From: Phallusia mammillata
Taxonomy: Eukaryota
Assembly: GCA_965637545.1 (NCBI GenBank)
Contig: OZ281497.1
Location: 10,106,001 to 10,170,000, forward strand
Direction of reading: 5' to 3'
Length of the DNA: 64,000 nucleotides
Shown: positions 20,734 through 36,931 of the stretch, piece by piece
Numbering within the stretch: the first letter of the stretch is position 1
Layout of the letters: each line of letters begins with the position of its first letter
The notes under the pieces: generated by a model
What the model was told of the DNA's origin: nothing
Database searches by the model: none
The model's input: only the letters and a program-made list of their open reading frames with translations
Translations under genes and position numbers: made by a program

Positions 20734-23700
20734 TCAAGATGATTCAGTGGATTCCAATTCAAAAACGGGATTTGCTCTTCCTGATGGAACGGATGAAAAT
20801 TCTTCACTTAATTCCAGGTCTGTAGAGCTGGAATCTTCTTTGGTTTCGTTACTAGTATCCGTGGTGTCCTCTCTTATTACTGTCTTCTCGCAATCACCGG
20901 ATGATCCGGACCGTTTTGCCTTTTCTCTCATTTTATCTATCACGTGCAACGACACCGTGCGGATTCTGTACATGGCTCTGCTGGTAAGAAACGCTGAGTC
21001 ATCTTTCTCGTTGTCATTACGTCGGCGATTTCGGTAGCGAAAGAAGGCGACGAGCATTAGCCCCTCGGAAAGCTGAAAGACTGAGTAAAGCAGCGGAAAA
21101 ATGAAGAAGCTTCCGATTAGCTGGTTGGGAAAGGCGACTTTTAGGATTGCACAACCAAGTTGACCATTCTGACATCCGCTCTCTATTGCCACCGTTCGAC
21201 GATGAATGCTATCCAGTCTAGCACACGAAGCAAATAGAAATCCAAGACCATATCTGGAATAGTTAACCAAATGTTATTAAAGGTAAAACATTACAAATTT
21301 TATAAACTGCCATTTAGAAGAGAAGTTGTGTTTCTAAAATACATCGTATATTGCAGATGTCCTAACGGATAGTTGCTGTCGTCATCAGTGCCCCTTGCAT
21401 GTACAATACGATGTATTCTTATACACACCTTCTCAGGCAGTTTGGATTTTATCAAGATGGTTTACTTTTTATGACGGTGTTTATTGTTTTGAAATTTACA
21501 TCAAATGCTTCCTAAATGTCTGAAATAATGTGTTTTGGATCCTTAGTAAATCTTAGTAGCACAGCCCAGGGTAAAAAACATAGGTTTAGATCAGGGGTTC
21601 CCAACCTTTTTTGCTGCTCGTAACCCTTTGTCAGGTCCGAGCATTCTTCGTACCCCCAAAAAAATTCTGTTGGAATTTTTTAGATATATATAGCTAAATT
21701 ACACTGCTTTTATAGCTAATTTAAACGTTAAACCGGTATTTCACGCAAAAATGATTACTTTTGTGTTTTGTTGTTTATTGTTGGCAACAAGTAAAAAAAG
21801 GATTGTTATGAGACAACAAGGCTTTTTACTAAATAACAACAATTATTTGTGCATAAGTTTTTTTTTTCAAAGCAAAGACCTTAATGACGTAATATCATTT
21901 ACAATCCCAAAATAAAACTGAAAAGCTGATCTGTGGCCCAAGCATCTTCGTACCCCTTGATGTTCAATCTCGTACCCCCAAGGGGTACGAGTACCCCCAG
22001 TTGGGAACCCCTGGTTTAGATTGTATTTTAAGTTTCTACCCGACTAGTGGCATGAAGACGCAAAAGATCCACATCTCCTTGGGCATGTATCGCAAAAGGG
22101 TGTCTTCGTACAGCAAACCGGAAAGTATCGCCAGCGCAACAATGGTCATCGCTAGTAGAATCTTGCATGTCTGCACAAACCGAATACAACACAATAAACT
22201 TATTTTCTGTTTTTCAACTCCCCGCTGGCCATAACGCGATTTTCATTTACGATTGCAATGTTTTTCTGTTGATTGCCGGAAATCAGTTGTGATGATAACC
22301 TGGGTCAAAGTTTTAGCTATTGTGACGTAATGAATGATGTATGATATCACTAATTGCGTAAAAGGAAATTACGTTTCTCTACACCGGAAGTGTACATGAT
22401 TTTGCCAATTGCATAAAAACGTTTGTTGTTCTAAGTTACAAAATTCAACAAAAAATCTATAAAATTAAAACCGTGGTGTTGACCCACTGAAGCTTGTTGT
22501 TACGCGGTATTGCTTTATGTAATTGGCAGTCGTATACAAACTCCAACATACAATCTTTCAAGATCTCCCAAATTAGATGGTTTGCAGGGACAAACCCAAT
22601 TGCTACTTTAATACCACACAACCTTGATACAATGTTTCCTACTAACACAAGTTAAATAAAATTTGATGGGAAGCTTTTTAGTACAAAAACAACAACATTA
22701 TTTTATGGTATGATGCTTTACCGTAACAATGTGTTTGGCGAGGTTTGGCCACTTCCAATTGATTCCAACACCTAAAGTAACAGGAAGCATCATCAGGATG
22801 AGCGACAGTATCACAGATGGATAGGGGATGAGATTTGCATAGTCGGTGTCAGCTGGCAACCAGTGGGATCCATACACGAACAGGTTAAAAGGAATGAACG
22901 CAAATGCCAGAACCGATGAACAGGCAGTCATCAGCATACTATGGGGAATAAAACATGTATGTTAAATATAGGAGTTTCACAACTATTTTTACATGTAACC
23001 TCTTTGGTTATATTTAATGTCATTGTTTACCTTTTCTCTTTACGTGCCTGCATATAGATGACTTAATCGTATTTGTTACTTTGTAGTGATTGTTAAAACA
23101 TCTATATTGTACTGGCATTTTAAATATTTAATTTTATTCATTCTTTGTCACAAGTTTGTGCCCAGTGTTTTTAACTTTTTGAAACTTTAGAAAAACGTTG
23201 GGTCAAGGACTTTATTGAAATTACCAAGTTAAGCTCAGGTTTTCAAGCGTTATATGTCTTGGATTCGGTTTCGTGATCAGACGCTATTAAGTGGTAAAGA
23301 TACGAACGTCAATCATTGTTAGTTACAAATTTAACATAACACCTCAGCACTTTATGTGACTTCACATGAAGTTGAGTAATTAACTGAGTTTGTTTAGTGT
23401 AAAAATGTGTGACCGGGTCACAGGAAATGCTGACTGCTCTTCATTCAACACTAATGGCATCAGATAAAAACCATTGCGGAAGTTAGCTGCTGGGAGAATT
23501 TTCTGCGTAATACTGTTTTTCCACTGTATGTGACGATTTTGTATAAATGTATAGAATCACGTTCATTTCAAACATAAACATAGATTTATAAATGTTAGAC
23601 TATTATAATAGTTAAATTGGGTAATCTGTTTACGGGAACCAATTAGTTTTAAGCGCAACCGAAGTCACATCCAAATCAGACACTAAAATTAAACCTAATT

Positions 23701-25357
23701 TTTAAACTTTAACTTATACGACGTAAAACACTTCTGTATGGAAACAAAGATTTTCAAAATGAAATTTTATTGACAATATTTTGTGTCGTAATTAGGTTTT
23801 AAAATAAATAAGTTAAATCACCAAAACCATTAAAAGCACAAAAAATTATAATCTACCTGAGAGCAATATCCCCTTCAATCAGATAGGTGAGAATATTGGA
23901 AAGACTACCACCTGGAACGCTTGCTGTGATGAGAATAGTGACAGCAGCTACAGTGTGTATCTGAGCAGCTGAAGCAACACCGAAAACCAGCAGAGGCATA
24001 ACAATAAACTGAGTAAAAGCAGCGATTCCAACGCCAACTGGTCGGCGAATATGATCTTTCAGAGTATGGATATCAACAGTAGAGCCTAAACACAATAAAT
24101 CTGTGATTAAGTTTACATTGCAATAGAATTTGGACGGACTATTTCGACATTGAGGCACAAATTCAGCACTTGTTCATACAAAAGACAAAAACACTTACAA
24201 ACCACATGCTAAACGGATTTTCAAAATTACTTGTAAGTTATGTGTGAGAGTAACTATTTTTTTACAAACCTTTAAAATGAAACTTGTTGAGATATATGTT
24301 TAGGTCGAGTAAAACGTTGTGTCACAGGCTTCATGTTGAGGTTTTTGTGGTTAAGAGTCAAAGCGGTTTGTCACAGAAGAAATACAAGTTTCGAAAAATG
24401 GTCACAATTTTGAGAAAGTTTGTTTTATGCAGTGGTGGGATTCAGCCGGTTGGCACCGGTTCTATAGAACAGTCTCACTAAATTTTATGAGATCAGCGAA
24501 CCGGCTAGCATTACTGGTTGCTGTTAATGGACTTTTTGTAACAGAACCGGCTGAAAAATATGACTTTCGTGATAGAACCGGCTGACAAAAAATTTGAATC
24601 CCACCGCTGGTTTTATACGTTTTTGAGATATTTTGTGTTTTTCCAGTGCTAGGGAATATAGGCACAAACAAACCAGTCAAAAACTTTTGTTTTCATTGGT
24701 TTGTATTGCCAATATAGCATTTCTTTGTAACTCTAGCATCATGTCACATCTTAAACGCAATTGTTTTGATTGCTACAGCGCTTAGTCATGCGTTTGTTGA
24801 CTTCTGTTGTTACCCCATCTCTTAGTGCTTCCAATTCATGCTCTTGTCTTGTTACGTCGTAAAAGACGATGACGTAATCTTTTTATTCTCACGTTACGTT
24901 TGTTTTGAGGATAGCTTTTCAAAGGGCTTGTGTAAGTGTTTGTATTTTGACCAGCTTGGTGTCCAAAGTCAATCAGTTTTTAACACAATTAAAAACAGTT
25001 TGCCATAGCTACAATAAAAGCGTTTAGAAAAACAAAATAATCACTGCATGGGCAGTTTGCCGCTTATTTCTCAAACCAACTGCATAATTACACTAACGTA
25101 CGTGGAATTACATTCAAAACGATGTATAATTTACCCATTCCAAGCATGACTTCAATTAGAATGCAGATTGACAACCATTTGATAGCTGTGTCCATCGCTA
25201 ATTTCTCTGGGTCGTTTGAGAAGTCGGTGATAGGTATTCCATCAGGTGTAAACCTCACTGTAACCCGTCCACTAATATTGGCTGAAGAAACACCGCCTAA
25301 ACTTTGATTTGCTGTCACCATTTTCGTTTCAATTATATCAACAGCTTCTGCCGCCAT
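20734..25357 (-). CDS. SLC10A: SLC10-family sodium/bile-acid (sulfated steroid) cotransporter, ASBT/SOAT-like, 439 aa; complement join(25357..25135,24085..23857,22938..22722,22170..22040,21253..20734)
   Basis: Five exons with GT-AG ends and phases 1,2,0,2 summing to 1320 nt. Family motifs: MLGMG-STVD, RRPVGVGIAAFTQFIVMPLL, PGGSLSNILTY, DIALSMLMTACSS, RRTVAIESGCQNGQL, FPLLYSVFQ. N-terminal sequons NQS and NIS. The paralog cannot be assigned without a tree. Confidence 0.93.
21592..22013. mobile_element. hAT (Buster-type) MITE, 422 bp, in SLC10 intron 4
   Basis: Perfect TIR CAGGGGTTCCCAAC / GTTGGGAACCCCTG; perfect TSD GTTTAGAT (21584..21591, 22014..22021); subterminal TCGTACCCC repeats. Confidence 0.95.
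24430..24609. mobile_element. hAT-type MITE, family A copy 2 (180 bp), in SLC10 intron 1
   Basis: TIRs CAGTGGTGGGATTCA / TGAATCCCACCGCTG; TSD GTTTTATG/GTTTTATA (7/8); near-identical to 15110..15288. Confidence 0.88.
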
Positions 25358-25366
25358 GTTAGTGGC

Positions 25367-26828
25367 CTACACAAAAAGTCAAGGGTTCATACACAATCAA
25401 CAAACGCCTGCAAAATTTAAATGAAAATAAGTCTCTGAAAAACAGAGCCTACATAAAATGTTCAAACTGCAACACCGTGTTTATAGACTTACATCTGATA
25501 CAAACAACAGATTGTTCAGACAAGATATTCCACACTACATTATTGCTTATTATGAACGATATTTCCAAGCAATTTATCGCAGAAACATCTTTTTTTGCAA
25601 CATCTATACACAAGCCATATAATGCAGGTGTACAGCTGTAAAAACCACACAGTTTTTTGTGTGTTGTAAACTCCGCATATGCATAACCAGTGGTCGGACA
25701 TACTGAACTCATAACTAAAGCCTACGCAAAGTATATTAGTTTAATCTGCTCATCAAAATTGTTCTTCAAAGCTCCTGATTTAATAACCAACGCTATTGGC
25801 GTTCATCATATGAGGTCAGACTAATGGATTTTGCAGATATTGACACCGAATCCACAACAAAAAAAACAGCAACCTGACGACTTTACCAGCACTTCGCTAC
25901 AGCACTGTGAGTGAATCATCATTCCGGCGTTGTAATGTATAAATATTATTCACTGATGCTCATGTCAGGAAGCGAACGCCGGCATCTCGCCTTACGTCAC
26001 AAACTTAATTGCCCTGCCTTCAATCCGGTAAACCCACGGGCTACTAAGATTAGTGCCCCTTCCCTCCATGCTCAACAAATCTTTAAAAACAATACTACAA
26101 TTTTTGATAGATTGCATAGGTATAGGCTACAGAGGTTTTTTATGGTTCGATATAAGCTACTAAATATATAACATTTTTCAAACAAGCTACATGGCAATCG
26201 AGCAAATAGCCATTCAGCTTTTTGTTTGTGCGATAGCAGGATGGTAAGTTACTTTGCGAACACTCAGAACACTTCTAAATTGAAAAGGTCGTTCGTCTGA
26301 GTGGGTACTTGCGACAATGGTCGCTTTGGCAAAAGTGTTGAACTTGAATTAGACTTTTAGAACGATCTCGTAAAGAAAAAGTCTTTGAGTGGTAAAATAA
26401 TTTTATTATTTAGTATTAAAAAACTAAACAGTTTTAACTTCTCATCCATGCCCGAACCGACGAATTAAATTCTGCCGCCATCCACAATTAGGGAACTCCC
26501 CCGGAGTACCAAGACCTGCCATGAGTTCTTGACGAGAGAGACGGTATTGCGAGATTTTTTTGTGCACTGTGCGCATATTTTTGAATATAAACTGAGGCTA
26601 CATAATTTGCATGATAAAATGTGAAAATGCCAAACTACGCATGTCCGAATGCACGCACATTGTGATGTGCATATGGTGAAAAATTGCAAATAAACGCCAG
26701 AACCCCTGTTGTGAACCAAGAGTAGCAAAGCAAACACTACTGCTTTTGTTCACCGTTTGTTATGATTTCTAGCAAACGTATGTAACTTCAAATGTTATGT
26801 TTTTAGTCTTAGTCTATTGTCCCATTAG
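25367..26828. promoter_or_regulatory. Putative shared promoter region of the divergent SLC10 and GTF3C2 genes
   Basis: Head-to-head arrangement ~1.5 kb apart; CpG-rich patches at ~25900-26060 and ~26450-26560 including GCCGCCAT (YY1-like); probable 51-nt 5'-UTR intron of GTF3C2 at 26778..26828 (GTATGT...CATTAG). Confidence 0.5.
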
Positions 26829-26848
26829 ATTGTTTTAAATTTGAAACC

Positions 26849-29800
26849 ATGAGCTCAAAACGAACGAAGAGAAGAAAAACATATTCTCCCCGAAAAGTTG
26901 TGTCCTCCTCCCAACAGGAAGAAGCACTTGACCTTTCACAACCATGTGTATCCACAACTAATTCACCAGATGCTCAATCCAGCACCCAGAATGGCTTTGA
27001 AGCTGTTCCCGGGGACCCAAAAGACCTGGCGTCATATATTTTGCAAAATTCAGTGATTAATTTTGTTGAAACACCTCGGCTTCCTGAGGAGTATTACACT
27101 GAAATATCACATGTGAAGTTGAACACAAAGCAAGGAGAGGAAATGTTGTACAAGTGTAGAGGATGTGAAAAGAAGACCTACAGAAGTGCTGGTGGATTGA
27201 AAGCACATGTGGTAAATTGTCCAGACCTCCCGAAATCTGCATTCACTTGTGTTGTGTGCAATGAAAAGTTCCATGAACTGATATATGCTACAGACCACAT
27301 CAAAGGTAATACTAAGTTGGTGCAACAATAGACCAATCTCATGTGTGTGGCAGTTCCCAATGAGATATCGGCTGTACAGAACCAACCATGTCCTGTGAGT
27401 ATGTGCAGTGTGCACGACACTAAGTCCATGTGCAAGACCATTTTAATTGGCTACAATGCAAGAATAGCAAATATTTTTACAAAAAAACATCTCATGTGTG
27501 CATCTTCCACACTCTGCAGACTGGTTAATGATGCATTTAATGAAAGCTGTAATTATAATTCCTAAAAATTAACAAATGCCAATGTCATTTTCCTGTAAAT
27601 AGAAGCAAAATATTTTAGAAAAGGGCAAAACTGACCATGCAGAACAATTTTGTTAGATTTTTAAATACTTTTCTCAGTGCACAAAGTCACGAGTTTGGTT
27701 AATGTGTTGATATTCCAATAATCATCATTACCAACACCTTCAACAAAGTGTAGTACATTTGGAAAAAGAAATGTATTTAGTCAATATGACTTGGTAAAAC
27801 ATTTTCTTAAGTTGCTTTTCCTACTATTAAGAAGCCTGGCATTTTAATCTATTGCAGATGTTCACATCACCCCTCACATAGGTGTTGCATTAGGACCTGG
27901 AAGACGTGCAGCAGCTTTGAGTCGAATGAAAATTAACAATTACGAATCAAGTAGTTTGGCCAGTGATGAAAAAACTGATGACTACTCTGCAACTGAAGAT
28001 TTAGATTTTGCTGCTGTTATAAAGGAAGAACCCCCAGTATGTAACAAAGTTATTATGGGTCCCCTTACCTGATCACATATTGTTTTTGTCCGTATTTTTT
28101 TTTCTTTTTTCTGTCTAATGCTGGTTTGTTATATCTAATGCTGGTCAGTTAAGATGAACATAAATTCATAACTGGGATCAGCCATGAAGCGTCTATGCAG
28201 ACCAGCGATCATGGTCAGGAAAGAGTGCTTCAAATTTATTCAAATTTACAAAGATGTTAGCTATTGATCCAAATCTTCCTGAAGTTTTACCCTAAATGGC
28301 CCAGCGGTTCACCCACAGTCCTCCAAAACGTAAAATTTTTAAAACGGCTGTAAGTACATGATCTGGGAGTTTGTTGGTTGGTGCAATGTATTCTAAATAA
28401 TTTTCTAACTTTTAATTTGATTCACCTATTTTTCCAGTCCTTTAGGTCAGAAATGCAAGCCCACTATATGTGCTAAAACTTTTTACAAATTTGTTTGCAG
28501 TGGGTTGCCCATTCAGTGTTCAAAATTTTGCTCAATAGCCAAATGGTTACCATTACAGCCCATAATATATGTACACTGGAAAGCCAAAGAGAAGCAGATA
28601 TTTTACTGCAAAATGAACTCAACTCAACCTTTGCTTATGCCAAAAAGAGGAATAAACAGAAACAGTCTGATAAATACCAAAACAGTTTGTGAAAAAACAA
28701 GAAACATAAACAAAGATAATTAGTTTAATATTGGAAAACTTCAGAATATTAACATTGAATAATATAAAAAATAAATGAACCTATTTTTCAGGAGCCTGAT
28801 TTACCTATGCGAAAGAGAAACACTGACCGTGCCCCTTTGGTACAGGGAGCATCCAGCACATATTCGTATTTGCACATTCCTTTGGCAAATGCATATGAAT
28901 GGACATACAACCGACTTAAAACTCTTGAAAGTGCCAACACTGCAAACAGCAAAATGGAAAATTCGTTGGTTTGTAAAACATCACTAACCGTGGACACTTT
29001 GTGTGATATGTTTCAATTCAATCCACGCTCACCACAGTTTGCCATTGATACAAAACTGCTGGACAAGCAATCAAAGCAAAAACACACAAACAAAACTGCA
29101 ATATCAGGAACTGGCCAAAAATTCCAAACTCTTCGATTGTTCAAGGCTCTTCCTTGCAATAAGCATAAATCAAAAACATTTTTTACTGGTGCACCAGTCT
29201 GGAGCATGGCATGGTGTCCATATCCAACCAATGAGATTGAGCGGGATCAGGTATTAGCTCTCTGCTCACATTCCCAAGAGCATTTTGTGGATCCTGCTCA
29301 AACTTATGATGAGCCTGTATTGCTGCAGTTATGGAATTGTGGCCAACTGCCTGCATCAAGAACCTGTTGTGAGGTACAGTGGATTTATGTGTGTCAGACT
29401 AAAGCTAAAAAATTAAAATAATTGCTAAGTTACTATAATTTTGAAGTTACTATAATTATGACATTTTATGACAAAAATAAAAAAATTTGCTATAATTTTG
29501 ACATTTTTTAATGGTTAAGATGAATATTTTCATACTGGGATCAGCCCTGAAGCGTCAATTTTTAATGGTAATTTAGGCTTATTAAATCTCCACTTTTAAA
29601 CTTTGTACTACCTGATAATTTGGTTGGTCCTAATTCCAACTTGCACACTTTTTTTACAACAACCTGGATTAAGTATTTTTTTAAATAACTGTAGGTTTCA
29701 GTAAGGAAATCTGTAATAAAATGGTTAAAACTAGGCTAAATTGTATGAATGCTCAAAACAGACAACAAAACATTTGAAAATTTTAGCAGTTTAGGTTCTA

Positions 29801-32800
29801 AGCAATTTTTTATTACTAAATCTGTTTTTTGTTGTCAAGAATCCCTATTTGATCCAAGGTTTTGTCTTGGACGGTGGTCCTGTTTGGGATATGAAGTGGT
29901 GCCCATTTGGTGGTTTTATCCAATCAGATGGTGATGAAGTAGGGAGATTAGGAATTCTAGCCCTGGCCCTTGGCTCTGGTGTGATAAATATTGTGACAGT
30001 GCCCTTACTGCAGAAAAGTAAAGAATCAAAATCTAAAATGGAAAATATCAAAAGGTTTGTATTGTTGTTAATGGATGACTCTTTTTATGTCCTTGGATGA
30101 CATAGTGTTGCGCTTTATGTGCCAAATCTTTTTTGACTTGTACGCATACAAAGTTTTTATAACTTGGTGCATTCCAAAAAAGAGAATGTTACTTTACAAT
30201 TGACAGTAAATTTGTTTGTTTGTTTTATTAGATTGAAACCCTCCCTGGTTTTATGGCCTCTTGCTGGTAAAAGTTTATTGTATGGTCAATGCTTTTCTGT
30301 GTCATGGTCAGTAAATGATGGATGCAAGTTTATTGCCGGGGGTTTTGCATCTGGTCATGTCGCAATATGGGATGTAAATACAGAATCAAAGTTTCTAAAA
30401 ACCAAGGAAAATGAAGGTGAGTTTTCATGCAAAATTAAATATATATCATACTCTTTATGCTTGGTAAAAAGCTTAAATTTTAGGACATATTATGTAAAGT
30501 TTTAATTCGAAGAAAAATTATTTCTGTATATCAGGTGAAAATTTTGTCTTGGAACCATGCATTTTTGTAGCAACTTGTAGTTGTCCAAAATCCCTACAAG
30601 TAGTGTTGTTTTATTTAGAAACCATCACTTTACTTCCTTTTGTTTCATTTCGTGCCCACTCTAAGCCAGTCAAGGGAATAGCATGGTGTCCATTTAACAC
30701 CTACATACTTGCTACTGCTGCTGCTGACAAACTATTAAAACTGTGGGATCGAAGAAGACCTGAATGTGATTTAAAGGTGAATCATATTAACGTCAACTCA
30801 ATGGACTTCAGTTTGACTGCATTGATAATATTACATGTGACACTTCCCAACCTCAAAGAGCACTTTAAGGGTTTGCTGCTGGGATGCAATGACAAATGTA
30901 TTTTACAAAAACAAATATTTCGCATCAAGGCTACACTGTAGTCACAACACTCTATAGTAGTATAAGAACGGACATGAAAGTTTAAATTAAATTAGTTTTT
31001 TGGTGCAACATCAGCATTTGCAATGATATACTCTGTGGCCATAGGCGCCGAACACGGGTATGCCGGGTATGCGTGGCATACCCGGACGAAAAACTCGGGT
31101 ATGCCGCATACCCGAGAATCGGACCAACGTTAGTCATGCGTTGTTGCTTTGTAAAATTATTTCGACTAATACGTAACATACGCAAATGATTTCAATCGAG
31201 GTTATTGTCTCACAACCATTAAATTGTTCGCATTCATTAAAGTTGTGAAACGTATTCGAGAAGCATCGGAATTTAAACATTAAAGAGTGGTAAATAGCAC
31301 AACAAAGGTATTGGCGCTGTCCTATGGTAGAAACGCCGCTGCCCCGGGTATTTTGTCACCAACCACGTGAACCGAAAAAAATTTTTCAACCGAAAAAAAA
31401 ACAATTAACACCCAATATTACGTCACAAACGTAAGGTTGGTACTTAGCCTACAAAAATTAACGTTGTCGAAAGTTTCAGGCAGGTCAGAACATCGTTGAA
31501 ACAAAGTACACTGAACTTTAAAATTAATTATGCGTCACATACAACTCACTGCGTTAAATATGCGACACGTTGTAAACGAAACAAGCGACGTTAAAACGAA
31601 CATTGTCAATGCTAGGCCAGAAGTGTGCGCGCTTTGTTGCGTGAAAACTAAGCATTTTTGTTATAGTTGTTACGGAGAAGATAAATGTTAAACATTAAAG
31701 TAATTTGCGACGCACGGCAAAGTATGTTAGGTGACAGTCGAACTAAATCTTTTCTATCTTTATTGTTTTGCCTACCCGTAATTTCGGCAAATAGGTCGTT
31801 AAATTGCAACAGTAGCAAAAGGGCCTGCGGTGGAATTACGTTGTGTAAAGCTTATATACTGCAACTTTAATGGATTCTTACCATATGCATCAGCAGAAAA
31901 TATATTTGGCATTATATGACGTCATTTTGTGACGTCATATAATACGGCATACCCGTAAAAAATTCAATGTCGGCGCCTATGTCTGTGGCAGTAGTACTTA
32001 TTGGCTGCATACCAAAATGCTGATTGTCACATTAAAATTTTTAGTACATATTTGATGAACACAATCTCGTAGTTTCCTATGTGTTTGCAAAAAGCATTGG
32101 GAGGGATGTGGCATTATGTTATGGTATAAAGTGAAAAGGTTGAGAACCACTGTGGTGCATGACTGCATGGTATGTACTTGGGATGCAATCACATCCGCTT
32201 TATGACATAGATGCAACCTTTTGGGCTTCCCCCATGATTCTTGTATATTCAGTGGATGTTGCTTAAGCACAAAGGAAAATACTTTTACTAGCATAAATTG
32301 CCAAAGCCGTTTCCAAATTTTTAAAATGTAAAATACTGACCCAAAGAATGTTTTTATTTCAACCAATTTTTTGCGCGAATTGTTTGGACATTTTATTTTA
32401 GTTCACATCAAATTTAAACTTGTTTATGTAGCTCTCTAATTGCACAGTTGGCAAAATTTGCTGCAATTGACATCTGGGTGTAAAATTCAAAAATTTTGGT
32501 GAAGGTTTTGAGTGAAAATACTGCTGTTGTTTTTCTGCAGGATAACCTTGCCCCTCGAACAAGCATCATCAATGAAATTTGTTGGCCACATTTGGACAAT
32601 GGAGTTTACCTGGCTACAGACTCAAGTTTTGCGAACCCTCATTCACATGGATGTTTGTGGGCAAGTTTTAAGCAAGCCAACTCAATGCAAAGCATTTTCC
32701 CTACCAAGGTTTGTTTCACTTTTGCACTAGAATCTAGAACCATTGTGAATGTAGCTATTCCTAAAACAGAAAACTTAAAAATAAAGGTTGTTATAGCACT

Positions 32801-34789
32801 AAAACAAAAGTTTTGTAAAATTGTCGAATTTAAATCTAAAATATATTTTTGAAAACTATATTAGTGTGAATTTTGGAAGTGTTACACAATGGTACTGCTG
32901 TATGTTTTTTTACCATGTCCAGAATATGTAAATATACATATATTGAAGTGAAATGTCTCATTTTATAGTATGTGGTATATGTGAACCTCATAAACATTAT
33001 CCTACAACATTATCTTGAAATTTCCCAGGCTTGTTGCTTCACTGTTACCCACAGTGACTGGCTCCATGGCGCCGCTGGTGGCGATGCATCGGGAAACGCG
33101 ATGGTGATGACTTGCAATAACTGGAATCGAAACAACCACTTTGTTAAAAAATCGCCTCGAATGTTGTTGTTTCAATCCATTCCGCTGTGGAATGACCAGC
33201 TACCAACTACCGGTGATGCTGAACAGGTATTGGCATCAGCTTGGACCAGTGTTTTATGTAAGCACTGTGACTAGGACGCCAGGTTGCTGTAAGAGATCTG
33301 CATGCGTGCCGTGAAATATACTATCTTGAGTTTATGACAAAATACAGGTGTGCATGACAACACTAGATCTCCATTTTTTAGCTTTTTGTTGCCGAAAGCA
33401 GTCTTATACACCCGCATTGAAGAGATGCAACTAATTTTTTAACAGCGTTTTGAGTTTTTAGCCCGCAAATGCCACTTTTACTTTACCGTTAATTTGCTTT
33501 AACCTGTAGAAGGCCTGGCGTACTAAATTTTTTACATAAGTATGCCGTGATCGCTGGTCTGCATTGACGCTTCTGGGCTGATCCCAGCTATTCATGAATG
33601 TCTTATTTGCTTTTTGTTTAAACATATCAGGCCGAAGCAACACATTCGCCGCAGAATGACGACACCTACGATTACAAACTTTTATTCCACGATTCTGACA
33701 TGACTGGAAACTTGTCGAGCTGGGAAAACAGATCAGCCCACAAAAAAATTAGGTTTGTATTCAATACGATACAGGTTGATGCAACCAAATACAATTAACT
33801 TCTGCCGTTCATAAAAGCGATAAACTTATTTTCAAATCTCCGTGTAATTTTGGCATGAAGATAGTTATTTTACTTGTCTAATAGTTTTTTTGTTTGTTAA
33901 TAGTTTTGTTATTTTTCTGTAGTTTATTATTTTTCTGTGGTTTTATTCACTGTTTCATACCGGAACGGAACGGAACGTTATACCGGAACGAAATAAATAA
34001 TTTTTGGCTCACATACCGGAACAAAATATCGAAATAAAAATTATTCAAAATACCGGAACGGAACAAAATACCGGTATTTTTTATTCCGGTATTTCGTTCT
34101 GAACATTTGACATGAAACAGTTGCTAAATATTTCGCGCCGGTAAACTGTGATAAAAATTGAAGCTCCAACAATTTACATTCGTTTGACCATTATTGACAA
34201 ATGTTATGTGACGTAACAACTACCGACAATAATTCCTATTCGTTGCAACTTTCTTTCTTTTTTTCGCTAAATAATTGTAAAGACCACTAAGAAATGTTCG
34301 TTTGTTAAGATCGAAATCCCGAAAAATACCGTTATAAATTTATTTCGGTCAGACCGGAACGAAATGAAAATAACGGTCCAGAACGAAATAACGAAATAAA
34401 TAATTTGCTCAGAACGAATAACGTTATTTGGTTTCGTTCCGTTCCGGTATGAAACACTGGTTTTATTTATGAATTTATAAACCCTGTCTAAAATTAAGCT
34501 TAATGTAAAACGTCTGAATATGGGTATGGAGTCTATAGCGAAAAATTCGAAACTTGACTTTGACATTGAAAGCAAATTTCTCAGAACTTACGAAGATTTT
34601 GCCGATGAGGTCTACCGCCCTCAAGTGTCGGGAGTACAAAAGATGCGGTGGAATCCGAACAAATCTTCTTTCACGTGGATTGCCAGTGGAACCCACTCTG
34701 GTCTTGTCCGGTTACATTGTGTATCGGGGATGATCTCCAGTGAAGTGGAGGAATTTCGGTTGTGTTGCAGTGACGATGGTTGCACCTGA
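26849..34789 (+). CDS. GTF3C2: General transcription factor IIIC subunit 2 (TFIIIC110, WD40) with N-terminal zinc-finger pair, 822 aa; join(26849..27305,27858..28036,28792..29373,29840..30054,30232..30416,30619..30776,32541..32708,33029..33226,33631..33752,34585..34789)
   Basis: Ten exons, all GT-AG, phases 1,0,0,2,1,0,0,0,2, total 2469 nt. TFIIIC110-type motifs: FFTGAPVWSMAWCP, LLQLWNCG, GGPVWDMKWCP..RLGILALA, GQCFSVSW, AHSKPVKGIAWCP..LATAAADKLLKLWD, YKLLFHDSD, VQKMRWNPN..WIASGTHSGLVRLH. The WD40 exons 3-10 are firm; joining exons 1-2 is phase-consistent but not shown by transcript data. Confidence 0.9.
28148..28214 (+). repeat. Short dispersed repeat, copy 1 (GTF3C2 intron 2)
   Basis: Core CTGGGATCAGCC(A/C)(T/A)GAAGCGTC(T/A)ATGCAGACCAGCGATCA shared with 29514..29556 (+) and 33545..33605 (-). 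Confidence 0.8.
29420..29505. repeat. Short AT-rich tandem duplications
   Basis: AAGTTACTATAATT twice, then TGACATTTT and CTATAATTTTG repeats. Confidence 0.6.
29514..29556 (+). repeat. Short dispersed repeat, copy 2 (GTF3C2 intron 3)
   Basis: GTTAAGATGAA..TTCATACTGGGATCAGCCCTGAAGCGTC; matches copy 1. Confidence 0.75.
31040..31981. mobile_element. hAT-type non-autonomous element, 942 bp, in GTF3C2 intron 6
   Basis: TIR CATAGGCGCCGA / TCGGCGCCTATG; perfect TSD TCTGTGGC (31032..31039, 31982..31989); GGGTATGC/GCATACCC subterminal repeats; no transposase ORF; CpG-rich inside a CpG-poor gene body. Confidence 0.92.
32138..32152. mobile_element. Solo right TIR of a Buster-type hAT element (truncated remnant)
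   Basis: GGTTGAGAACCACTG, identical to the right TIR of 17949..18414; no matching left end found. Confidence 0.55.
33545..33605 (-). repeat. Short dispersed repeat, copy 3, inverted (GTF3C2 intron 8)
   Basis: Plus strand reads TGATCGCTGGTCTGCATTGACGCTTCTGGGCTGATCCCAG, the reverse complement of the copy-1 core. Confidence 0.8.
33948..34459. mobile_element. hAT-type MITE, 512 bp, in GTF3C2 intron 9
   Basis: TIR CACTGTTTCATACCGGAAC / GTTCCGGTATGAAACACTG (1 mismatch); perfect TSD GTTTTATT (33940..33947, 34460..34467); many CCGGAACG/CGAAAT subterminal repeats. Confidence 0.92.
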
Positions 34790-34868: not shown

Positions 34869-34874
34869 AATAAA
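34869..34874 (+). terminator. Polyadenylation signal of GTF3C2
   Basis: AATAAA 80 nt after the stop codon. Confidence 0.6.
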
Positions 34875-36931
34875 CCGAACTCACTTGTTAGTTGTATTTT
34901 TTGGAGATTGTAATGAGTGCTTTCTGGTGTGAGCACAAGAAAGACAATACCCAGTGTATCATTACGATCATGCGAAATACATCGGTCTTTACTGTGTTTT
35001 GTCAATACTTTCAGTCTATTGGTAAAAGAGTAAACGCTAGGACACATTGTTGAACAAAAATATCAGGGGTTGCACCAAAGGGAACAAATCAATTCTACAC
35101 TTTTTATCCACTCTACTGTCAACAGCAATGTTACCGGTTTACTTGTGCAGCAAATTATGTCCTTGTAACAATAACCATTGGAAGAATGCTTCTTCTGAAG
35201 GGAACGTAATGCTGTAAAAAGTTGATGTCGACATTATTATGAAAATCACCAGCCCAGAACCCTTCAGGCAGCGAAACCAGGTGCTGAAACGTTTTAAGCT
35301 ATCGTTACCTTTCAGTTTAGCAAACTGGTTACCAGTTTAAATAACCCTTAACAGAAGTCCTTTTCATTTCGCCTTTTTTTCTGTTTACTAAGATTACTGC
35401 GCTTTTACTGCACAATATTACAAAACTTTGCTGCAGGTAATGATCACTGTTTCATCTTAAGCGTATTAGTGCAGCTGGCGACGAGAGGTTGGCTGTATAA
35501 GCTAGTGAAACGATTTTCATTCGCCCAAACAACAACGAACACTTTTGACCCAAACGGAGGCCCACGGTTGTGTTTTTCCATTTCTGCAAATTCCCTTCTT
35601 ATAGCTTACAGTATTCGATAAACTTTAAACATAATCTTGTTCGTACTTTAACGGAAGCTGTCATTCCAAAAAACAAAAATGTTACTCTTCAACAAAATAT
35701 GATATTCTTAAAAGAAAGTCTAAAGTTCCAAAGCTGCACTGTCTCAACACACTTTTAGAACCCACAGAATTTAAATACAAACGTTGTATTTAAAAATGGG
35801 CTTCTTGACGTAAAAAAGGCACGAAACGAAATGTACAGGAATAGAAACGGACAAATGAACGATCAAGGAAATAAACGAAACAAGATTTAAGAAGCAAAAC
35901 ACATAATACGCGACATTGAGATCCGCAAAACAAAATACGTAGCAAAATTTACAGAATATTTTAAAGTGATTCAGTCAGACCATTGTATGCCAATGTGCTG
36001 GAATCGGCAATAGATTTAAAGCATGAAATTTATCGCCATTTCAATATGCTTCGCTTTATAACTGTATTAAAAACTAGTAGCAACAACCAATAGTGCGATT
36101 TGTTCATGTTGGAGTTGGTTAAGGAATGAAGGGCAGTTGTAGAAAATACTGATAAAAAATCGAGGTTATATGCCTTGTAGACAATTCAGCGTGCCTTAAA
36201 CCGGCAGGCATCTAACCACCGTGTGACTCGATATAAAAAAGTAAGTAGATAGCACATTAAGAAGCTGTTGAAAAGATGCAAAACTGAATTTTGATAGAAC
36301 CTTTTGGAAAAGTAAACGTTGTAGTGCCATAAAAAACGGGTTTTCCTGGTTTGCATAGAGCACACCACAAACTGAAAATATGTTGAGTAGCTCGTTTGGT
36401 TGCAGGCATATCATCATGCACAATGAATAATTTTTTCTTGTTTTAAACCTATTTTCAAAAGTAGACTATTCGGAGTGCCAACAAAATAAGATTTTTTTTG
36501 CAGAAACAGTTCAATACTTTAACTGACCAAGAATGGGCACTGAAACGTGTAATTACGTTTTTGTCGGTTATTTTTTTTCAGCATGCGCCAAATAAGGCTA
36601 TTTAGAAAACACACAATTCGCTGAGTACAAAAAAAGAATTTCCTTTAAAACCTTGATCGCATTGAGTGGCACGTGATAAAATAAGTGAACAATCTGGTAA
36701 AAAAACGAACGCAAGCTGATGCAAAAATGCTCACATTATACGAAATAAAGCACCGAAAACAAAAAATCCGCATGGTGTCGCGACGCGCACTGAGCCAGTA
36801 TGACGTCACGAGACCCCGACAGTTACGTCACGGACGTCAGGTATGCAATTGCGATAATGTACGCTTGGTGACAGTTGTCTTTGTTATTCCTCTGGAGGTA
36901 GTTCCAATGTATTTCTAAAGACGTGGCTCTT

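What the first reader, a model, noticed from the sequence alone, without database searches (positions are those of the whole stretch)
27155..27865. ZNF512-like C2HC+C2H2 zinc-finger pair spliced onto TFIIIC110 (GTF3C2): possible fused Pol III factor / chromatin-targeting protein
Seen: exon 1 encodes CRGCEKKTYRSAGGLKAHVVNC (C-x2-C-x13-H-x3-C), then FTCVVCNEKFHELIYATDHIK. The phase-1 splice to 27858 adds DVH and completes C-x2-C-x12-H-x4-H. A second ligand supplied across an intron argues the join is real, and exon 2 then joins the WD40 exons in phase 0. Known, from recalled sequences that need verifying: this tandem spacing, with T-x5-GLKxH-x3-C, is that of the finger pairs of vertebrate ZNF512B (CPTCNVVTRKTLVGLKKHMEVC...CQHCRKQFKSKAGLNYHTMAEH). 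ZNF512/512B bind pericentric repeats and recruit SUV39H; human GTF3C2 has no annotated C2H2 fingers; human GTF3C2 and ZNF512 both map to 2p23. Exon 2 also has GRRAAAL, weakly recalling an R-x-A-A-Q-V-A motif I recall in both human proteins. Inference: a single ZNF512-TFIIIC110 protein may be ancestral and was split in vertebrates, giving TFIIIC its own sequence-specific fingers and linking Pol III/insulator sites to repeat recognition.
Basis: partly seen in the sequence, partly recalled or inferred. Interest (0 to 1): 0.85.

Follow-up and report, generated by a model that had tools for sequence, protein, structure and literature searches.

The report
Tunicate TFIIIC110 carrying ZNF512-type zinc fingers
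The sea squirt version of a core RNA polymerase III factor (TFIIIC110/GTF3C2) really does start with a conserved pair of zinc fingers. The first finger looks most like those of the vertebrate heterochromatin proteins ZNF512/ZNF512B, which hints at, but does not prove, a shared origin.

Summary
Window 26849-27305 is coding exon 1 of the Phallusia mammillata GTF3C2 (TFIIIC110) gene. It encodes a C2HC finger and most of a C2H2 finger, whose last His comes from exon 2 across a phase-1 intron.

Transcriptome contigs from four studies join exons 1-2 to the WD40 exons in one spliced-leader mRNA. The 822-aa product is already in UniRef/nr as 'GTF3C2-like'.

Clavelina and four unnamed loci repeat the finger exon, the split and the downstream WD40 exons. 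Ciona savignyi and two short contigs show only the finger exon. So the module looks conserved in tunicates. Bird GTF3C2 lacks the fingers but keeps the RRAA motif that follows them.

The ZNF512 likeness is partly borne out:
- For: a profile of finger 1 ranks ZNF512B and ZNF512 first and second among all PDB sequences, and a shape search puts ZNF512/512B clusters on top.
- Against: the ZNF512 Pfam models are not met, finger 2 is generic, and a 1.8-billion-protein search found no ZNF512.

I also found an N-terminal RRKxxxP[KR] motif like ZNF512B's RBBP4/NuRD-binding motif.

Whether the fusion is ancestral could not be tested, because no non-tunicate invertebrate GTF3C2 was reachable.

The parts
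26805..26806 (+). AG acceptor for spliced-leader trans-splicing; mature mRNA body starts at 26807
   Evidence: The X7 contig carries ...GGGATTCTATTTGAATA before 26805. This is the Ciona SL ATTCTATTTGAATAAG (PMC1488885). SL+GT occurs 3179 times in this genome and 0 times in the reversed control. There is no ATG between 26807 and 26848.
26849..27305 (+). Coding exon 1 (residues 1-152 plus 1 base), ending in phase 1
26870..26899 (+). N-terminal basic motif RRKTYSPRKV (residues 8-17). It fits the NuRD-interaction motifs RRKQxxP and RK(x)xxPxK/R.
   Evidence: Regex present in 8 of 10 family members at residues 5-18 of the true N-terminus, and 0 times in 14.5k control residues. Motif definitions come from PMC11602157. 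Binding was not tested.
27008..27142 (+). Conserved helical lead-in (residues 54-98: P-x-DP-x-x-L...F-x-E-x-P-x-x-P), predicted to form one unit with the fingers
   Evidence: Alignments A1/A3. AF2 model of residues 52-158: pLDDT 90.9, with helices at model residues 6-16, 18-21 and 29-41.
27155..27220 (+). Finger 1, atypical C2HC (C-x2-C-x13-H-x3-C), residues 103-124; the ZNF512-like finger
   Evidence: Profile A6 ranks ZNF512B and ZNF512 first and second in the PDB.
27248..27305 (+). Finger 2 (C2H2), first part: C-x2-C-x12-H-I-K plus the first base of the Asp codon
   Evidence: Generic C2H2 by profile A7.
27306..27857 (+). Intron 1 (GT..AG, phase 1), splitting finger 2 between its two His ligands
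   Evidence: Joint in 4 runs. The donor is at the same position in 6 other loci.
27858..27865 (+). Finger 2, last part: completes Asp, then Val-His (the fourth zinc ligand)
27858..28036 (+). Coding exon 2 (residues 153-212): end of finger 2, RRAA motif, acidic stretch
27899..27940 (+). GRRAAALSRMKINN (residues 167-180), counterpart of vertebrate GTF3C2 KRRAARVALLYLQEL
   Evidence: Alignment A5 with three unnamed loci, Clavelina and two bird GTF3C2.
28792..29373 (+). Coding exon 3: linker and start of the WD40 propeller; matches human GTF3C2 residues 401-461
29840..30054 (+). Coding exon 4 (WD40)
30232..30416 (+). Coding exon 5 (WD40)
30619..30776 (+). Coding exon 6 (WD40 repeat, Pfam PF00400)
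32541..32708 (+). Coding exon 7
   Evidence: The loose end of the contigs at 30777 maps to 32542. The model equals P0001.
33029..33226 (+). Coding exon 8
33631..33752 (+). Coding exon 9
34585..34789 (+). Coding exon 10 with the stop codon. AATAAA lies at 34869, and contig length puts the 3' end near 34919.

Best explanation
The finding is the true 5' coding part of the Phallusia mammillata GTF3C2 gene. GTF3C2 encodes TFIIIC110, the tau91/Sfc6 subunit of the tauB module of the RNA polymerase III factor TFIIIC.

Shown:
- One spliced-leader-capped mRNA of 10 coding exons makes an 822-aa protein.
- Its N-terminal ~215 residues hold, in order: a basic RRKxxxP[KR] motif; a helical lead-in; an atypical C2HC finger; a C2H2 finger whose last His is supplied across a conserved phase-1 intron; and an RRAA motif shared with vertebrate GTF3C2.
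- The WD40 propeller follows.
- The module recurs in Clavelina (full-length protein) and in four unnamed loci. Ciona savignyi and two short contigs show the finger exon alone.
- It is absent from bird GTF3C2.

Inferred:
- In human tauB the TFIIIC110 propeller lies on the DNA just downstream of the B box, and yeast tau91 helps tau138 bind DNA. So the finger module most likely acts as an extra nucleic-acid or chromatin tether that strengthens or redirects TFIIIC binding next to the B box.
- The residues at the usual base-contact positions are small (finger 1: S/T, G) or acidic and variable (finger 2). I therefore expect backbone or shape binding, or protein contacts, rather than a long specific DNA site.
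- Finger 1 is of the ZNF512/ZNF512B type.
- The N-terminal motif may bind RBBP4.
For: - Gene structure and expression. Spliced leader.
- Identity as GTF3C2: human 8cli_C, E 2e-6 from one exon; bird GTF3C2, E 1e-67; Atlas score 0.97 to GTF3C2 clusters and TM 0.64/0.56 to chordate GTF3C2 and Sfc6; UniRef name.
- Conservation: 10 relatives with invariant ligands. The finger exon is colinear with WD40 exons in L022, L023, L024/25 and L026. The split finger and RRAA motif are conserved.
- Fold: AF2 pLDDT 90.9, two beta-beta-alpha units plus lead-in helices. The model aligns with DNA-bound tandem fingers, although all Z scores are below 5.
- TFIIIC110 position on DNA and tau91 cooperation: PMC11811891.
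- ZNF512 type.
- NIM-like motif.
Against: - No binding data of any kind exist.
- Net charge of the finger pair is near neutral, and the helix positions -1, +2, +3 and +6 are S, G, G, A in finger 1 and E, I, Y, D in finger 2. These are poor for base contacts (read).
- ZNF512B fingers also mediate oligomerisation, so the module may not touch DNA at all.
- The RNA evidence consists of assembled contigs whose library type was only guessed to be RNA.
Confidence: 0.72

Rival explanations
1. Reader's scenario. An ancestral chordate (or older) TFIIIC110 carried the ZNF512-type module. In the vertebrate stem the N-terminal part became the separate genes ZNF512 and ZNF512B, the finger pair multiplied, and GTF3C2 lost its fingers. 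Tunicates keep the original fused state.
For: - Finger 1 profile: ZNF512B 34.2 bits and ZNF512 31.3 bits rank first and second of 177,635 PDB sequences; the next hit scores 25.4.
- Their best single fingers (24.2 and 21.6 bits) beat 232 and 231 of 232 fingers from the best generic ZNFs.
- Both share the same C-x2-C-x13-H-x3-C, an 8-9 residue linker, and a C2H2 with H-x4-H.
- ZNF512/512B clusters fill rows 1-6 of the Atlas shape search.
- The distribution is complementary. ZNF512B is vertebrate-specific. There is no PF21276/PF21367 hit in the Phallusia genome. Fingers are absent from bird GTF3C2, which keeps the motif that follows them.
- Human GTF3C2 and ZNF512 lie within 417 kb.
- The NIM-like motif is shared in kind with ZNF512B.
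- From my own memory only: human ZNF512 has an RRSA...LQELA stretch like that of GTF3C2.
Against: - No outgroup was examined, and the fusion was seen only in tunicate-like sequences.
- Arthropod GTF3C2 clusters show no zinc-finger Pfam at 10% or more of members.
- The Pfam ZNF512 models were missed by 9 of 10 members, with a best score of 20.4 bits against a cut-off of 27.
- Finger 2 is generic.
- The ZNF512 finger that best matches the tunicate C2HC finger is the C2H2 one, not its positional equivalent.
- The Atlas rows are one per Pfam set, so generic ZNFs are collapsed.
- In human, 10 genes lie between the two loci.
Confidence: 0.3
2. Tunicate-lineage gain. A finger-pair exon was added in front of the RRAA motif of GTF3C2 in the tunicate stem. 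It came either from a ZNF512-like precursor gene or from an ordinary C2H2 gene. Any likeness to ZNF512 is then due to shared finger type or convergence, and vertebrates never had the fused form.
For: - All identified carriers are tunicates: Phallusia, Clavelina and Ciona savignyi. The unnamed loci are closer to them than to birds.
- The single-sequence search finds only generic ZNFs beyond the orthologues.
- The pair profile A3 does not separate ZNF512B from ZBTB17, ZBTB20, HIC2 or HKR3.
- The best generic ZNFs reach 24-30 bits against 23.1 for ZNF512B.
- PDB structure searches are not discriminating.
- Tunicate genomes are known for rapid gene-structure change (general knowledge).
Against: - The specific finger-1 signal for ZNF512/512B.
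- None of about 260 generic fingers forms a C2HC-C2H2 pair.
- The complementary distribution with the vertebrate-only ZNF512 family.
Confidence: 0.4
3. The N-terminal extension is mainly a protein-recruiting arm rather than a DNA reader. The RRKxxxP[KR] motif would dock RBBP4/7 (NuRD-type deacetylase/remodeller), and the fingers would mediate self-association, as in ZNF512B. TFIIIC-bound sites would thereby be coupled to local chromatin repression or insulation.
For: - The motif has all four positions essential in ZNF512B (R, K, P, and K/R at position 8) plus a hydrophobic residue after it. It lies at the N-terminus as in FOG-1, SALL and BCL11A, in 8 of 10 members.
- ZNF512B fingers oligomerise.
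- The base-contact positions of both fingers are weak.
Against: - A short basic motif can equally be a nuclear-localisation signal.
- The glutamine at position 4 of the N-terminal motif is replaced.
- Two family members (P0011, P0016) lack the motif.
Confidence: 0.3
4. Artefact. Exons 1-2 belong to a separate small zinc-finger gene and are joined to GTF3C2 only by assembly or read-through.
For: The RNA evidence consists of assembled contigs, not single molecules.
Against: - The same joints appear in four studies, in frame, with no stop.
- The spliced leader lies at the 5' end, and the first AUG is at 26849.
- The same order of exons occurs in 5 other loci and in the Clavelina protein.
- Finger 2 is incomplete without exon 2, and exon 2 carries the GTF3C2 RRAA motif.
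Confidence: 0.02

Closest known systems
Vertebrate GTF3C2 / TFIIIC110 (human 8cli_C; bird P0033, P0034)
   Same: Orthologous WD40 propeller and C-terminal region (28% identity over ~60% of the length, E 1e-67). The RRAA...L-x-x-Q motif sits ahead of an acidic stretch, and the protein has the same role expected in tauB.
   Different: The vertebrate proteins have no zinc fingers, no helical lead-in and no RRKxxxP motif. Their N-terminus is low-complexity with AT-hook-like basic runs.
Yeast tau91 (Tfc6) / S. pombe Sfc6
   Same: Same propeller fold (Atlas TM 0.56 to Sfc6 clusters). tau91 cooperates with tau138 in DNA binding, so an N-terminal DNA-binding helper fits the family theme.
   Different: The Atlas fungal clusters list no common Pfam family, so no fingers are seen there. 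That the fungal helper region is basic or AT-hook-like rests on my own knowledge and was not tested here.
ZNF512 / ZNF512B (PDB 2ctd, 2gqj; Pfam PF21276, PF21367)
   Same: An atypical C2HC finger is followed by a typical C2H2 finger. Both share the C-x2-C-x13-H-x3-C spacing, the T/S...G-L-K-x-H core, an 8-9 residue linker and H-x4-H in the second finger. These proteins are the best PDB and Atlas neighbours of finger 1 and of the module. ZNF512B also has an RK-xxx-P-x-K RBBP4-binding motif.
   Different: The tunicate protein has one pair instead of three or four, and it is fused to a WD40 propeller. The Pfam ZNF512 models are not reached, and finger 2 is not ZNF512-like. The ZNF512B motif is internal rather than N-terminal. 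ZNF512/512B bind pericentric heterochromatin; nothing is known for the tunicate protein.
N-terminal NuRD-interaction motif of FOG-1, SALL1/4, BCL11A, ZNF827
   Same: R-R-K-x-x-x-P close to the N-terminus of a zinc-finger-bearing nuclear protein.
   Different: Position 4 is T/S/N rather than Q. The motif starts at residue 5-10 rather than 2-3. Binding is untested.
HKR3/ZBTB48 fingers (PDB 2dlq)
   Same: Contains a C2HC-like finger followed by a C2H2 finger, and was the best single-sequence PDB hit for Phallusia exon 1.
   Different: Its spacing is C-x2-C-x12-H-x4-C. It drops to E 9 with the finger-1 family profile.

Membership tests
GTF3C2 / TFIIIC110 / tau91 | WD40 propeller homologous to GTF3C2 along most of its length | tested here: met
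   8cli_C, E 2e-6 with exon 3 alone. Bird GTF3C2, E 4e-67 and 8e-66. Atlas features 0.97, TM 0.64.
GTF3C2 / TFIIIC110 / tau91 | Conserved N-terminal RRAA...LxxQ motif seen in vertebrate GTF3C2 | tested here: met
   Alignment A5 of tunicate exon 2 peptides with two bird proteins. The match is weakest in Phallusia itself.
GTF3C2 / TFIIIC110 / tau91 | Assembly with TFIIIC90 and TFIIIC220 into tauB | not testable with these tools
   Partner sequences from this genome were not assembled. Inferred from orthology only.
Classical C2H2 zinc finger | C-x2-C-x12-H-x3-5-H ligand pattern with a beta-beta-alpha fold | tested here: met
   Finger 2 pattern after splicing. AF2 strand/helix pattern, pLDDT 90.9.
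Classical C2H2 zinc finger | Pfam zf-C2H2 (PF00096) at its gathering score of 25.2 bits | tested here: not met
   Phallusia scores 12.9-20.3 bits. Relative P0003 reaches 26.3, and P0016 reaches 27.7 on PF13894.
ZNF512 / ZNF512B | Fingers arranged as an atypical C2HC followed by a typical C2H2 | tested here: met
   One such pair. Definition from PMC11602157. Same spacing as 2gqj.
ZNF512 / ZNF512B | Pfam PF21276 (ZNF512_C2HC) at 27 bits | tested here: not met
   No hit for P0001. Best in the family is P0016 at 20.4 bits, E 4e-4. No hit over 17.6 bits anywhere in the genome.
ZNF512 / ZNF512B | Pfam PF21367 (ZNF512_zf-C2H2) at 27 bits | tested here: not met
   Only P0004 at 14.3 bits. Genome best is 17.8 bits in generic ZNF clusters. 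The finger 2 profile gives generic hits.
ZNF512 / ZNF512B | Three to four finger pairs and no other globular domain | tested here: not met
   A single pair fused to a WD40 propeller.
ZNF512 / ZNF512B | ZNF512 family members are the closest finger relatives | tested here: inconclusive
   Yes for the finger 1 profile against the PDB, against selected generic ZNFs and in the Atlas shape search. No for the single-sequence search of 1.84 billion proteins, the pair profile and PDB fold searches.
FOG-1-like NuRD-interaction motif | RRKQxxP (N-terminal) or RK(x)xxPxK/R (internal) sequence | tested here: met
   RRKTYSPRK at residues 8-16, and in 8 of 10 relatives. Q at position 4 is replaced.
FOG-1-like NuRD-interaction motif | Direct binding to RBBP4 | not testable with these tools

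The most novel reading that the evidence does not exclude
The vertebrate-only heterochromatin/NuRD proteins ZNF512 and ZNF512B descend from the N-terminal arm of an ancestral TFIIIC110. That arm held an RBBP4-binding motif, a C2HC-C2H2 pair and an RRAA helix, and tunicates still carry it fused. In tunicates TFIIIC itself would then bring ZNF512-type fingers and a NuRD-docking motif to tRNA genes and extra-TFIIIC sites. This would give a direct molecular link between Pol III factor sites and chromatin silencing or insulation.
Probability: 0.25. Interest if true: 0.8.

Novelty: new variant of a known kind. Interest (0 to 1): 0.55.

Why it matters
TFIIIC marks tRNA genes and also acts at 'extra TFIIIC' sites as a chromatin boundary and looping factor. 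How it talks to chromatin is poorly understood.

A TFIIIC110 with its own conserved finger pair and a possible RBBP4-docking motif offers a natural experiment. The test organisms (Ciona, Phallusia) allow embryo electroporation and CUT&RUN.

If the ZNF512 link is real, it would explain where a vertebrate-specific family of pericentric heterochromatin proteins came from. It would also explain why ZNF512 lies near GTF3C2 in the human genome.

If the link is not real, the finding is still a clean case of a lineage-specific DNA- or chromatin-binding add-on to a general transcription factor.

Tried and rejected
- Word-indexed protein searches. With the N-terminal region of P0001 and the finger region of Clavelina P0030, only the query's own cluster came back. 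With the P0001+P0030 alignment, only two bird GTF3C2 came back. So I obtained no survey of invertebrate GTF3C2 and no full-length ZNF512 sequences.
- Metagenome locus search.
- Foldseek and VIA-align against the PDB gave only generic tandem fingers, with E of 0.04 or more and Z below 5. ZNF512 2ctd ranked 17th.
- Control structure. The AF2 model of a generic Phallusia finger pair (L002) reached only pLDDT 58.9, so I did not use it as a control for the Atlas shape search. That search therefore has no structural control. The finger 2 profile serves as a sequence control.
- The Atlas feature search with the bird RRAA motif gave no usable hit.
- Paper searches for the recalled ZNF512 motif strings gave nothing. 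Searches for ZNF512 together with GTF3C2 or TFIIIC returned only GWAS or list co-mentions.
- P0014 and P0009 looked like possible long finger-bearing GTF3C2 proteins, but they are plain multi-finger proteins with no WD40 similarity.
- I rejected the idea that two separate genes are joined by assembly (see rival explanations).
Full report
**What is in the sequence**

The window is AT-rich animal DNA. The UniRef name of its protein assigns it to the ascidian Phallusia mammillata.

An ATG at 26849 opens a 152-codon exon. It encodes the first finger at residues 103-124 (nt 27155-27220), with the pattern C-x2-C-x13-H-x3-C. It then encodes FTCVVCNEKFHELIYATDHIK.

The exon ends at 27305 with one spare G in front of a GT donor. 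Behind an AG acceptor, exon 2 starts at 27858, so the codons read D-V-H. The second finger then becomes C-x2-C-x12-H-x4-H. Without the splice the frame stops nine codons later, with no second His. Exon 2 ends at 28036 and joins exon 3 at 28792 in phase 0.

**One transcript, one protein**

Twenty public runs of this species hold about 40% of the sampled words of 26700-30700. That share is what the exons make up.

I laid contigs from four runs of four studies on 26500-32400. Each run gave one contig of about 2.5-2.6 kb. The contig covers 26805-27305, 27858-28036, 28792-29373, 29840-30054, 30232-30416 and 30619-30776, and runs on into sequence that maps to 32542. All listed joints are GT..AG.

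One contig carries, ahead of 26805, the end of a template-switch primer followed by ATTCTATTTGAATA. This is the ascidian spliced leader (PMC1488885). In this genome the leader followed by GT occurs 3179 times, against none for the reversed control, and includes 553-bp tandem arrays. So the mRNA is trans-spliced at the AG at 26805-26806. The first AUG after that site is 26849.

I completed the model with exons 32541-32708, 33029-33226, 33631-33752 and 34585-34789. It equals a public 822-aa protein except for one residue, R363L. That protein is named 'General transcription factor 3C polypeptide 2-like'.

Caveat: the evidence consists of assembled contigs, and the library type was only guessed to be RNA.

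**It is GTF3C2**

- Exon 3 alone matches human GTF3C2 in the TFIIIC cryo-EM entries, at E 2e-6.
- A two-sequence profile finds bird GTF3C2 at E 1e-67.
- The ESM Atlas places the protein with GTF3C2 clusters by features (0.97) and by structure (TM 0.64 to chordate GTF3C2, 0.56 to fission-yeast Sfc6).

**The finger module is conserved in a clade**

phmmer of exon 1 against 1.84 billion representative proteins found ten relatives of the whole exon.

- The named ones are Clavelina lepadiformis and Ciona savignyi. The Clavelina protein is 819 aa, has the same architecture, and is annotated both as GTF3C2-like and as a C2H2-type domain protein.
- The unnamed ones lie on ENA, Logan and TARA contigs. 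In four of these loci the finger exon is followed on the same strand by the GTF3C2 WD40 exons.
- All seven zinc ligands encoded by exon 1 are invariant, as are a Gly in finger 1 and parts of a lead-in region (P-x-DP-x-x-L ... F-x-E-x-P).
- In six loci the exon ends at the same place, H-[IL]-x plus G|GT. In four of them the next exon begins x-x-H and continues with RRRAARQSRLKIQMF or a close variant.

The split finger is therefore under selection and is not a chance reading.

An AF2 model of residues 52-158 has a mean pLDDT of 90.9. It shows three lead-in helices and two beta-beta-alpha fingers.

**Vertebrate GTF3C2**

The two bird proteins have no Cys/His finger pattern. They do have KRRAA(R/K)VALLYLQELAEEL, which aligns with the tunicate motif that follows finger 2. 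So vertebrates keep what lies behind the fingers but not the fingers themselves.

**Is the pair ZNF512-like? Evidence against**

- The Phallusia protein hits neither ZNF512 Pfam model.
- Only one relative reaches 20.4 bits on PF21276, against a cut-off of 27.
- Neither model finds anything in the whole genome.
- Apart from the orthologues, the 1.84-billion-protein search found only ordinary multi-finger proteins.
- A profile of the whole pair puts ZNF512B (2gqj) first in the PDB, but within 2 bits of ZBTB17, ZBTB20, HIC2 and HKR3.
- The best generic proteins reach 24-30 bits per domain, against 23.1 for ZNF512B.
- Fold searches of the PDB are uninformative.
- A profile of finger 2 gives Zif268-type hits and no ZNF512 at all.

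**Is the pair ZNF512-like? Evidence for**

It shows the same C-x2-C-x13-H-x3-C spacing, the same T/S...G-L-K-x-H core and a linker of 8 residues, against 8-9 in tunicates.
- A published description defines ZNF512B as four pairs of one atypical C2HC and one typical C2H2 finger, and calls it vertebrate-specific (PMC11602157).
- None of about 260 fingers in the 15 best generic proteins forms such a pair.
- A profile of the lead-in plus finger 1 ranks ZNF512B (34.2 bits, E 2e-7) and ZNF512 (31.3 bits, E 1.5e-6) first and second among 177,635 PDB sequences. The next hit scores 25.4 bits.
- Their best single fingers (24.2 and 21.6 bits) exceed 232 and 231 of the 232 finger domains of the selected generic proteins.
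- A shape search of the ESM Atlas with my model puts ZNF512B and ZNF512 clusters in rows 1-6 and 9, at TM 0.37-0.41 by query. The best generic row scores 0.34-0.38.

Two cautions apply:
- The Atlas list shows one row per set of Pfam families, so generic clusters are collapsed. My structural control failed.
- The ZNF512 finger that matches the tunicate C2HC finger best is the second, C2H2, finger of the pair.

My reading is that finger 1 is of the ZNF512 type (about 55-60% that this reflects common descent). Finger 2 carries no such signal. The protein is not a member of the ZNF512 family as Pfam defines it.

Residues 8-17 read RRKTYSPRKV. The ZNF512B paper defines two RBBP4/NuRD-binding motifs: N-terminal RRKQxxP and internal RK(x)xxPxK/R. 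In the internal motif R, K, P and the last basic residue are essential, and a following hydrophobic residue helps.

The tunicate motif has all of these. It occurs in 8 of 10 relatives within the first 18 residues, and nowhere in 14.5k control residues. It could equally be a nuclear-localisation signal. Binding is untested.

**Evolution**

- Human GTF3C2 and ZNF512 lie in one 417-kb interval with ten genes between them (PMC2570409).
- No paper in the library discusses the two together beyond locus lists.
- Tunicates are the sister group of vertebrates. Tunicates have the fingers on GTF3C2 and no ZNF512. Birds have GTF3C2 without fingers, and ZNF512B is reported as vertebrate-specific. Both a vertebrate split and a tunicate capture would give this pattern.
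- I could not reach any amphioxus, echinoderm or protostome GTF3C2, so the direction is open.
- Arthropod GTF3C2 clusters in the Atlas show no zinc-finger family at the 10% level. That test is weak, because the tunicate fingers are also below Pfam thresholds.
- I recall that human ZNF512 contains an RRSA...LQELA stretch very like the GTF3C2 motif. The part of that recollection I could check (its first finger pair, against 2ctd) was right. The motif itself is unverified.

**Likely mechanism**

In the human TFIIIC-DNA structure, the TFIIIC110 propeller binds DNA just downstream of the B box through a basic groove. Yeast tau91 cooperates with tau138 in DNA binding (PMC11811891).

An N-terminal finger pair on this subunit would sit close to that DNA. 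I therefore take it as an auxiliary tether for DNA or chromatin.

The canonical base-contact positions are S, G, G, A in finger 1 (S/T and G conserved) and acidic or variable in finger 2. So a long specific site is unlikely. Self-association, as for ZNF512B fingers, and RBBP4 recruitment are live alternatives. None of this is shown.

**Verdict**

- The architecture is already in public databases, and the literature searched here does not discuss it.
- The ZNF512 link is suggestive for finger 1 and for the overall arrangement, but unproven.
- The ancestral-fusion story is untested.

Noticed in passing
window 26870-26899: The N-terminal motif RRKTYSPRKV fits the RBBP4/NuRD-interaction motifs defined for FOG-1-type proteins and ZNF512B. 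It is conserved in 8 of 10 relatives and absent from bird GTF3C2 and from 15 generic ZNFs.
   Followed up: partly
window 26805-26807; G000:C3:11108338-11147465: The GTF3C2 mRNA is trans-spliced to the ascidian spliced leader ATTCTATTTGAATAAG. The leader plus GT donor occurs about 3179 times in the genome, including long tandem arrays with a 553-bp period (SL RNA genes).
   Followed up: partly
window 28145-28214 (intron 2): A ~70-bp element at ~97% identity to thousands of places in the genome (3606 first-look candidates). Some occur as inverted pairs about 360 bp apart, so it is probably a MITE end. It explains the high contig depth and the many loose ends there in the RNA contigs.
   Followed up: partly
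window 29242-29244: The window encodes Arg at residue 363 where the public protein has Leu. This is the only difference in 822 residues and is presumably allelic.
   Followed up: no
window 30205-30236 (intron 4): A (TTTG)n microsatellite directly before the acceptor of exon 5. The reads tool skipped it as a repeat, which is why the 30054/30232 joint is not in its joint table.
   Followed up: no
window 22698-24158, minus strand: Exons of a sodium/bile-acid symporter family (SBF, PF01758) gene lie upstream of GTF3C2 and are transcribed divergently from it.
   Followed up: no
None of the Pfam-scanned ORFs flanking GTF3C2 corresponds to a human 2p23 neighbour, so no local synteny was seen.
   Followed up: no
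L026:1104-2754; L027, L028, L029: A very compact orthologue with introns of only tens of bases (Logan run), and TARA Oceans scaffolds carrying the finger exon. These are probably pelagic tunicates. P0016 from TARA is the member closest to ZNF512B (25.9 bits in one domain; PF21276 E 4e-4).
   Followed up: partly
P0033:120-135: Bird GTF3C2 has an AT-hook-like run (PRKRGRKSK) ahead of the RRAA motif. So the N-terminal arm of this subunit carries different DNA-binding add-ons in different lineages.
   Followed up: no
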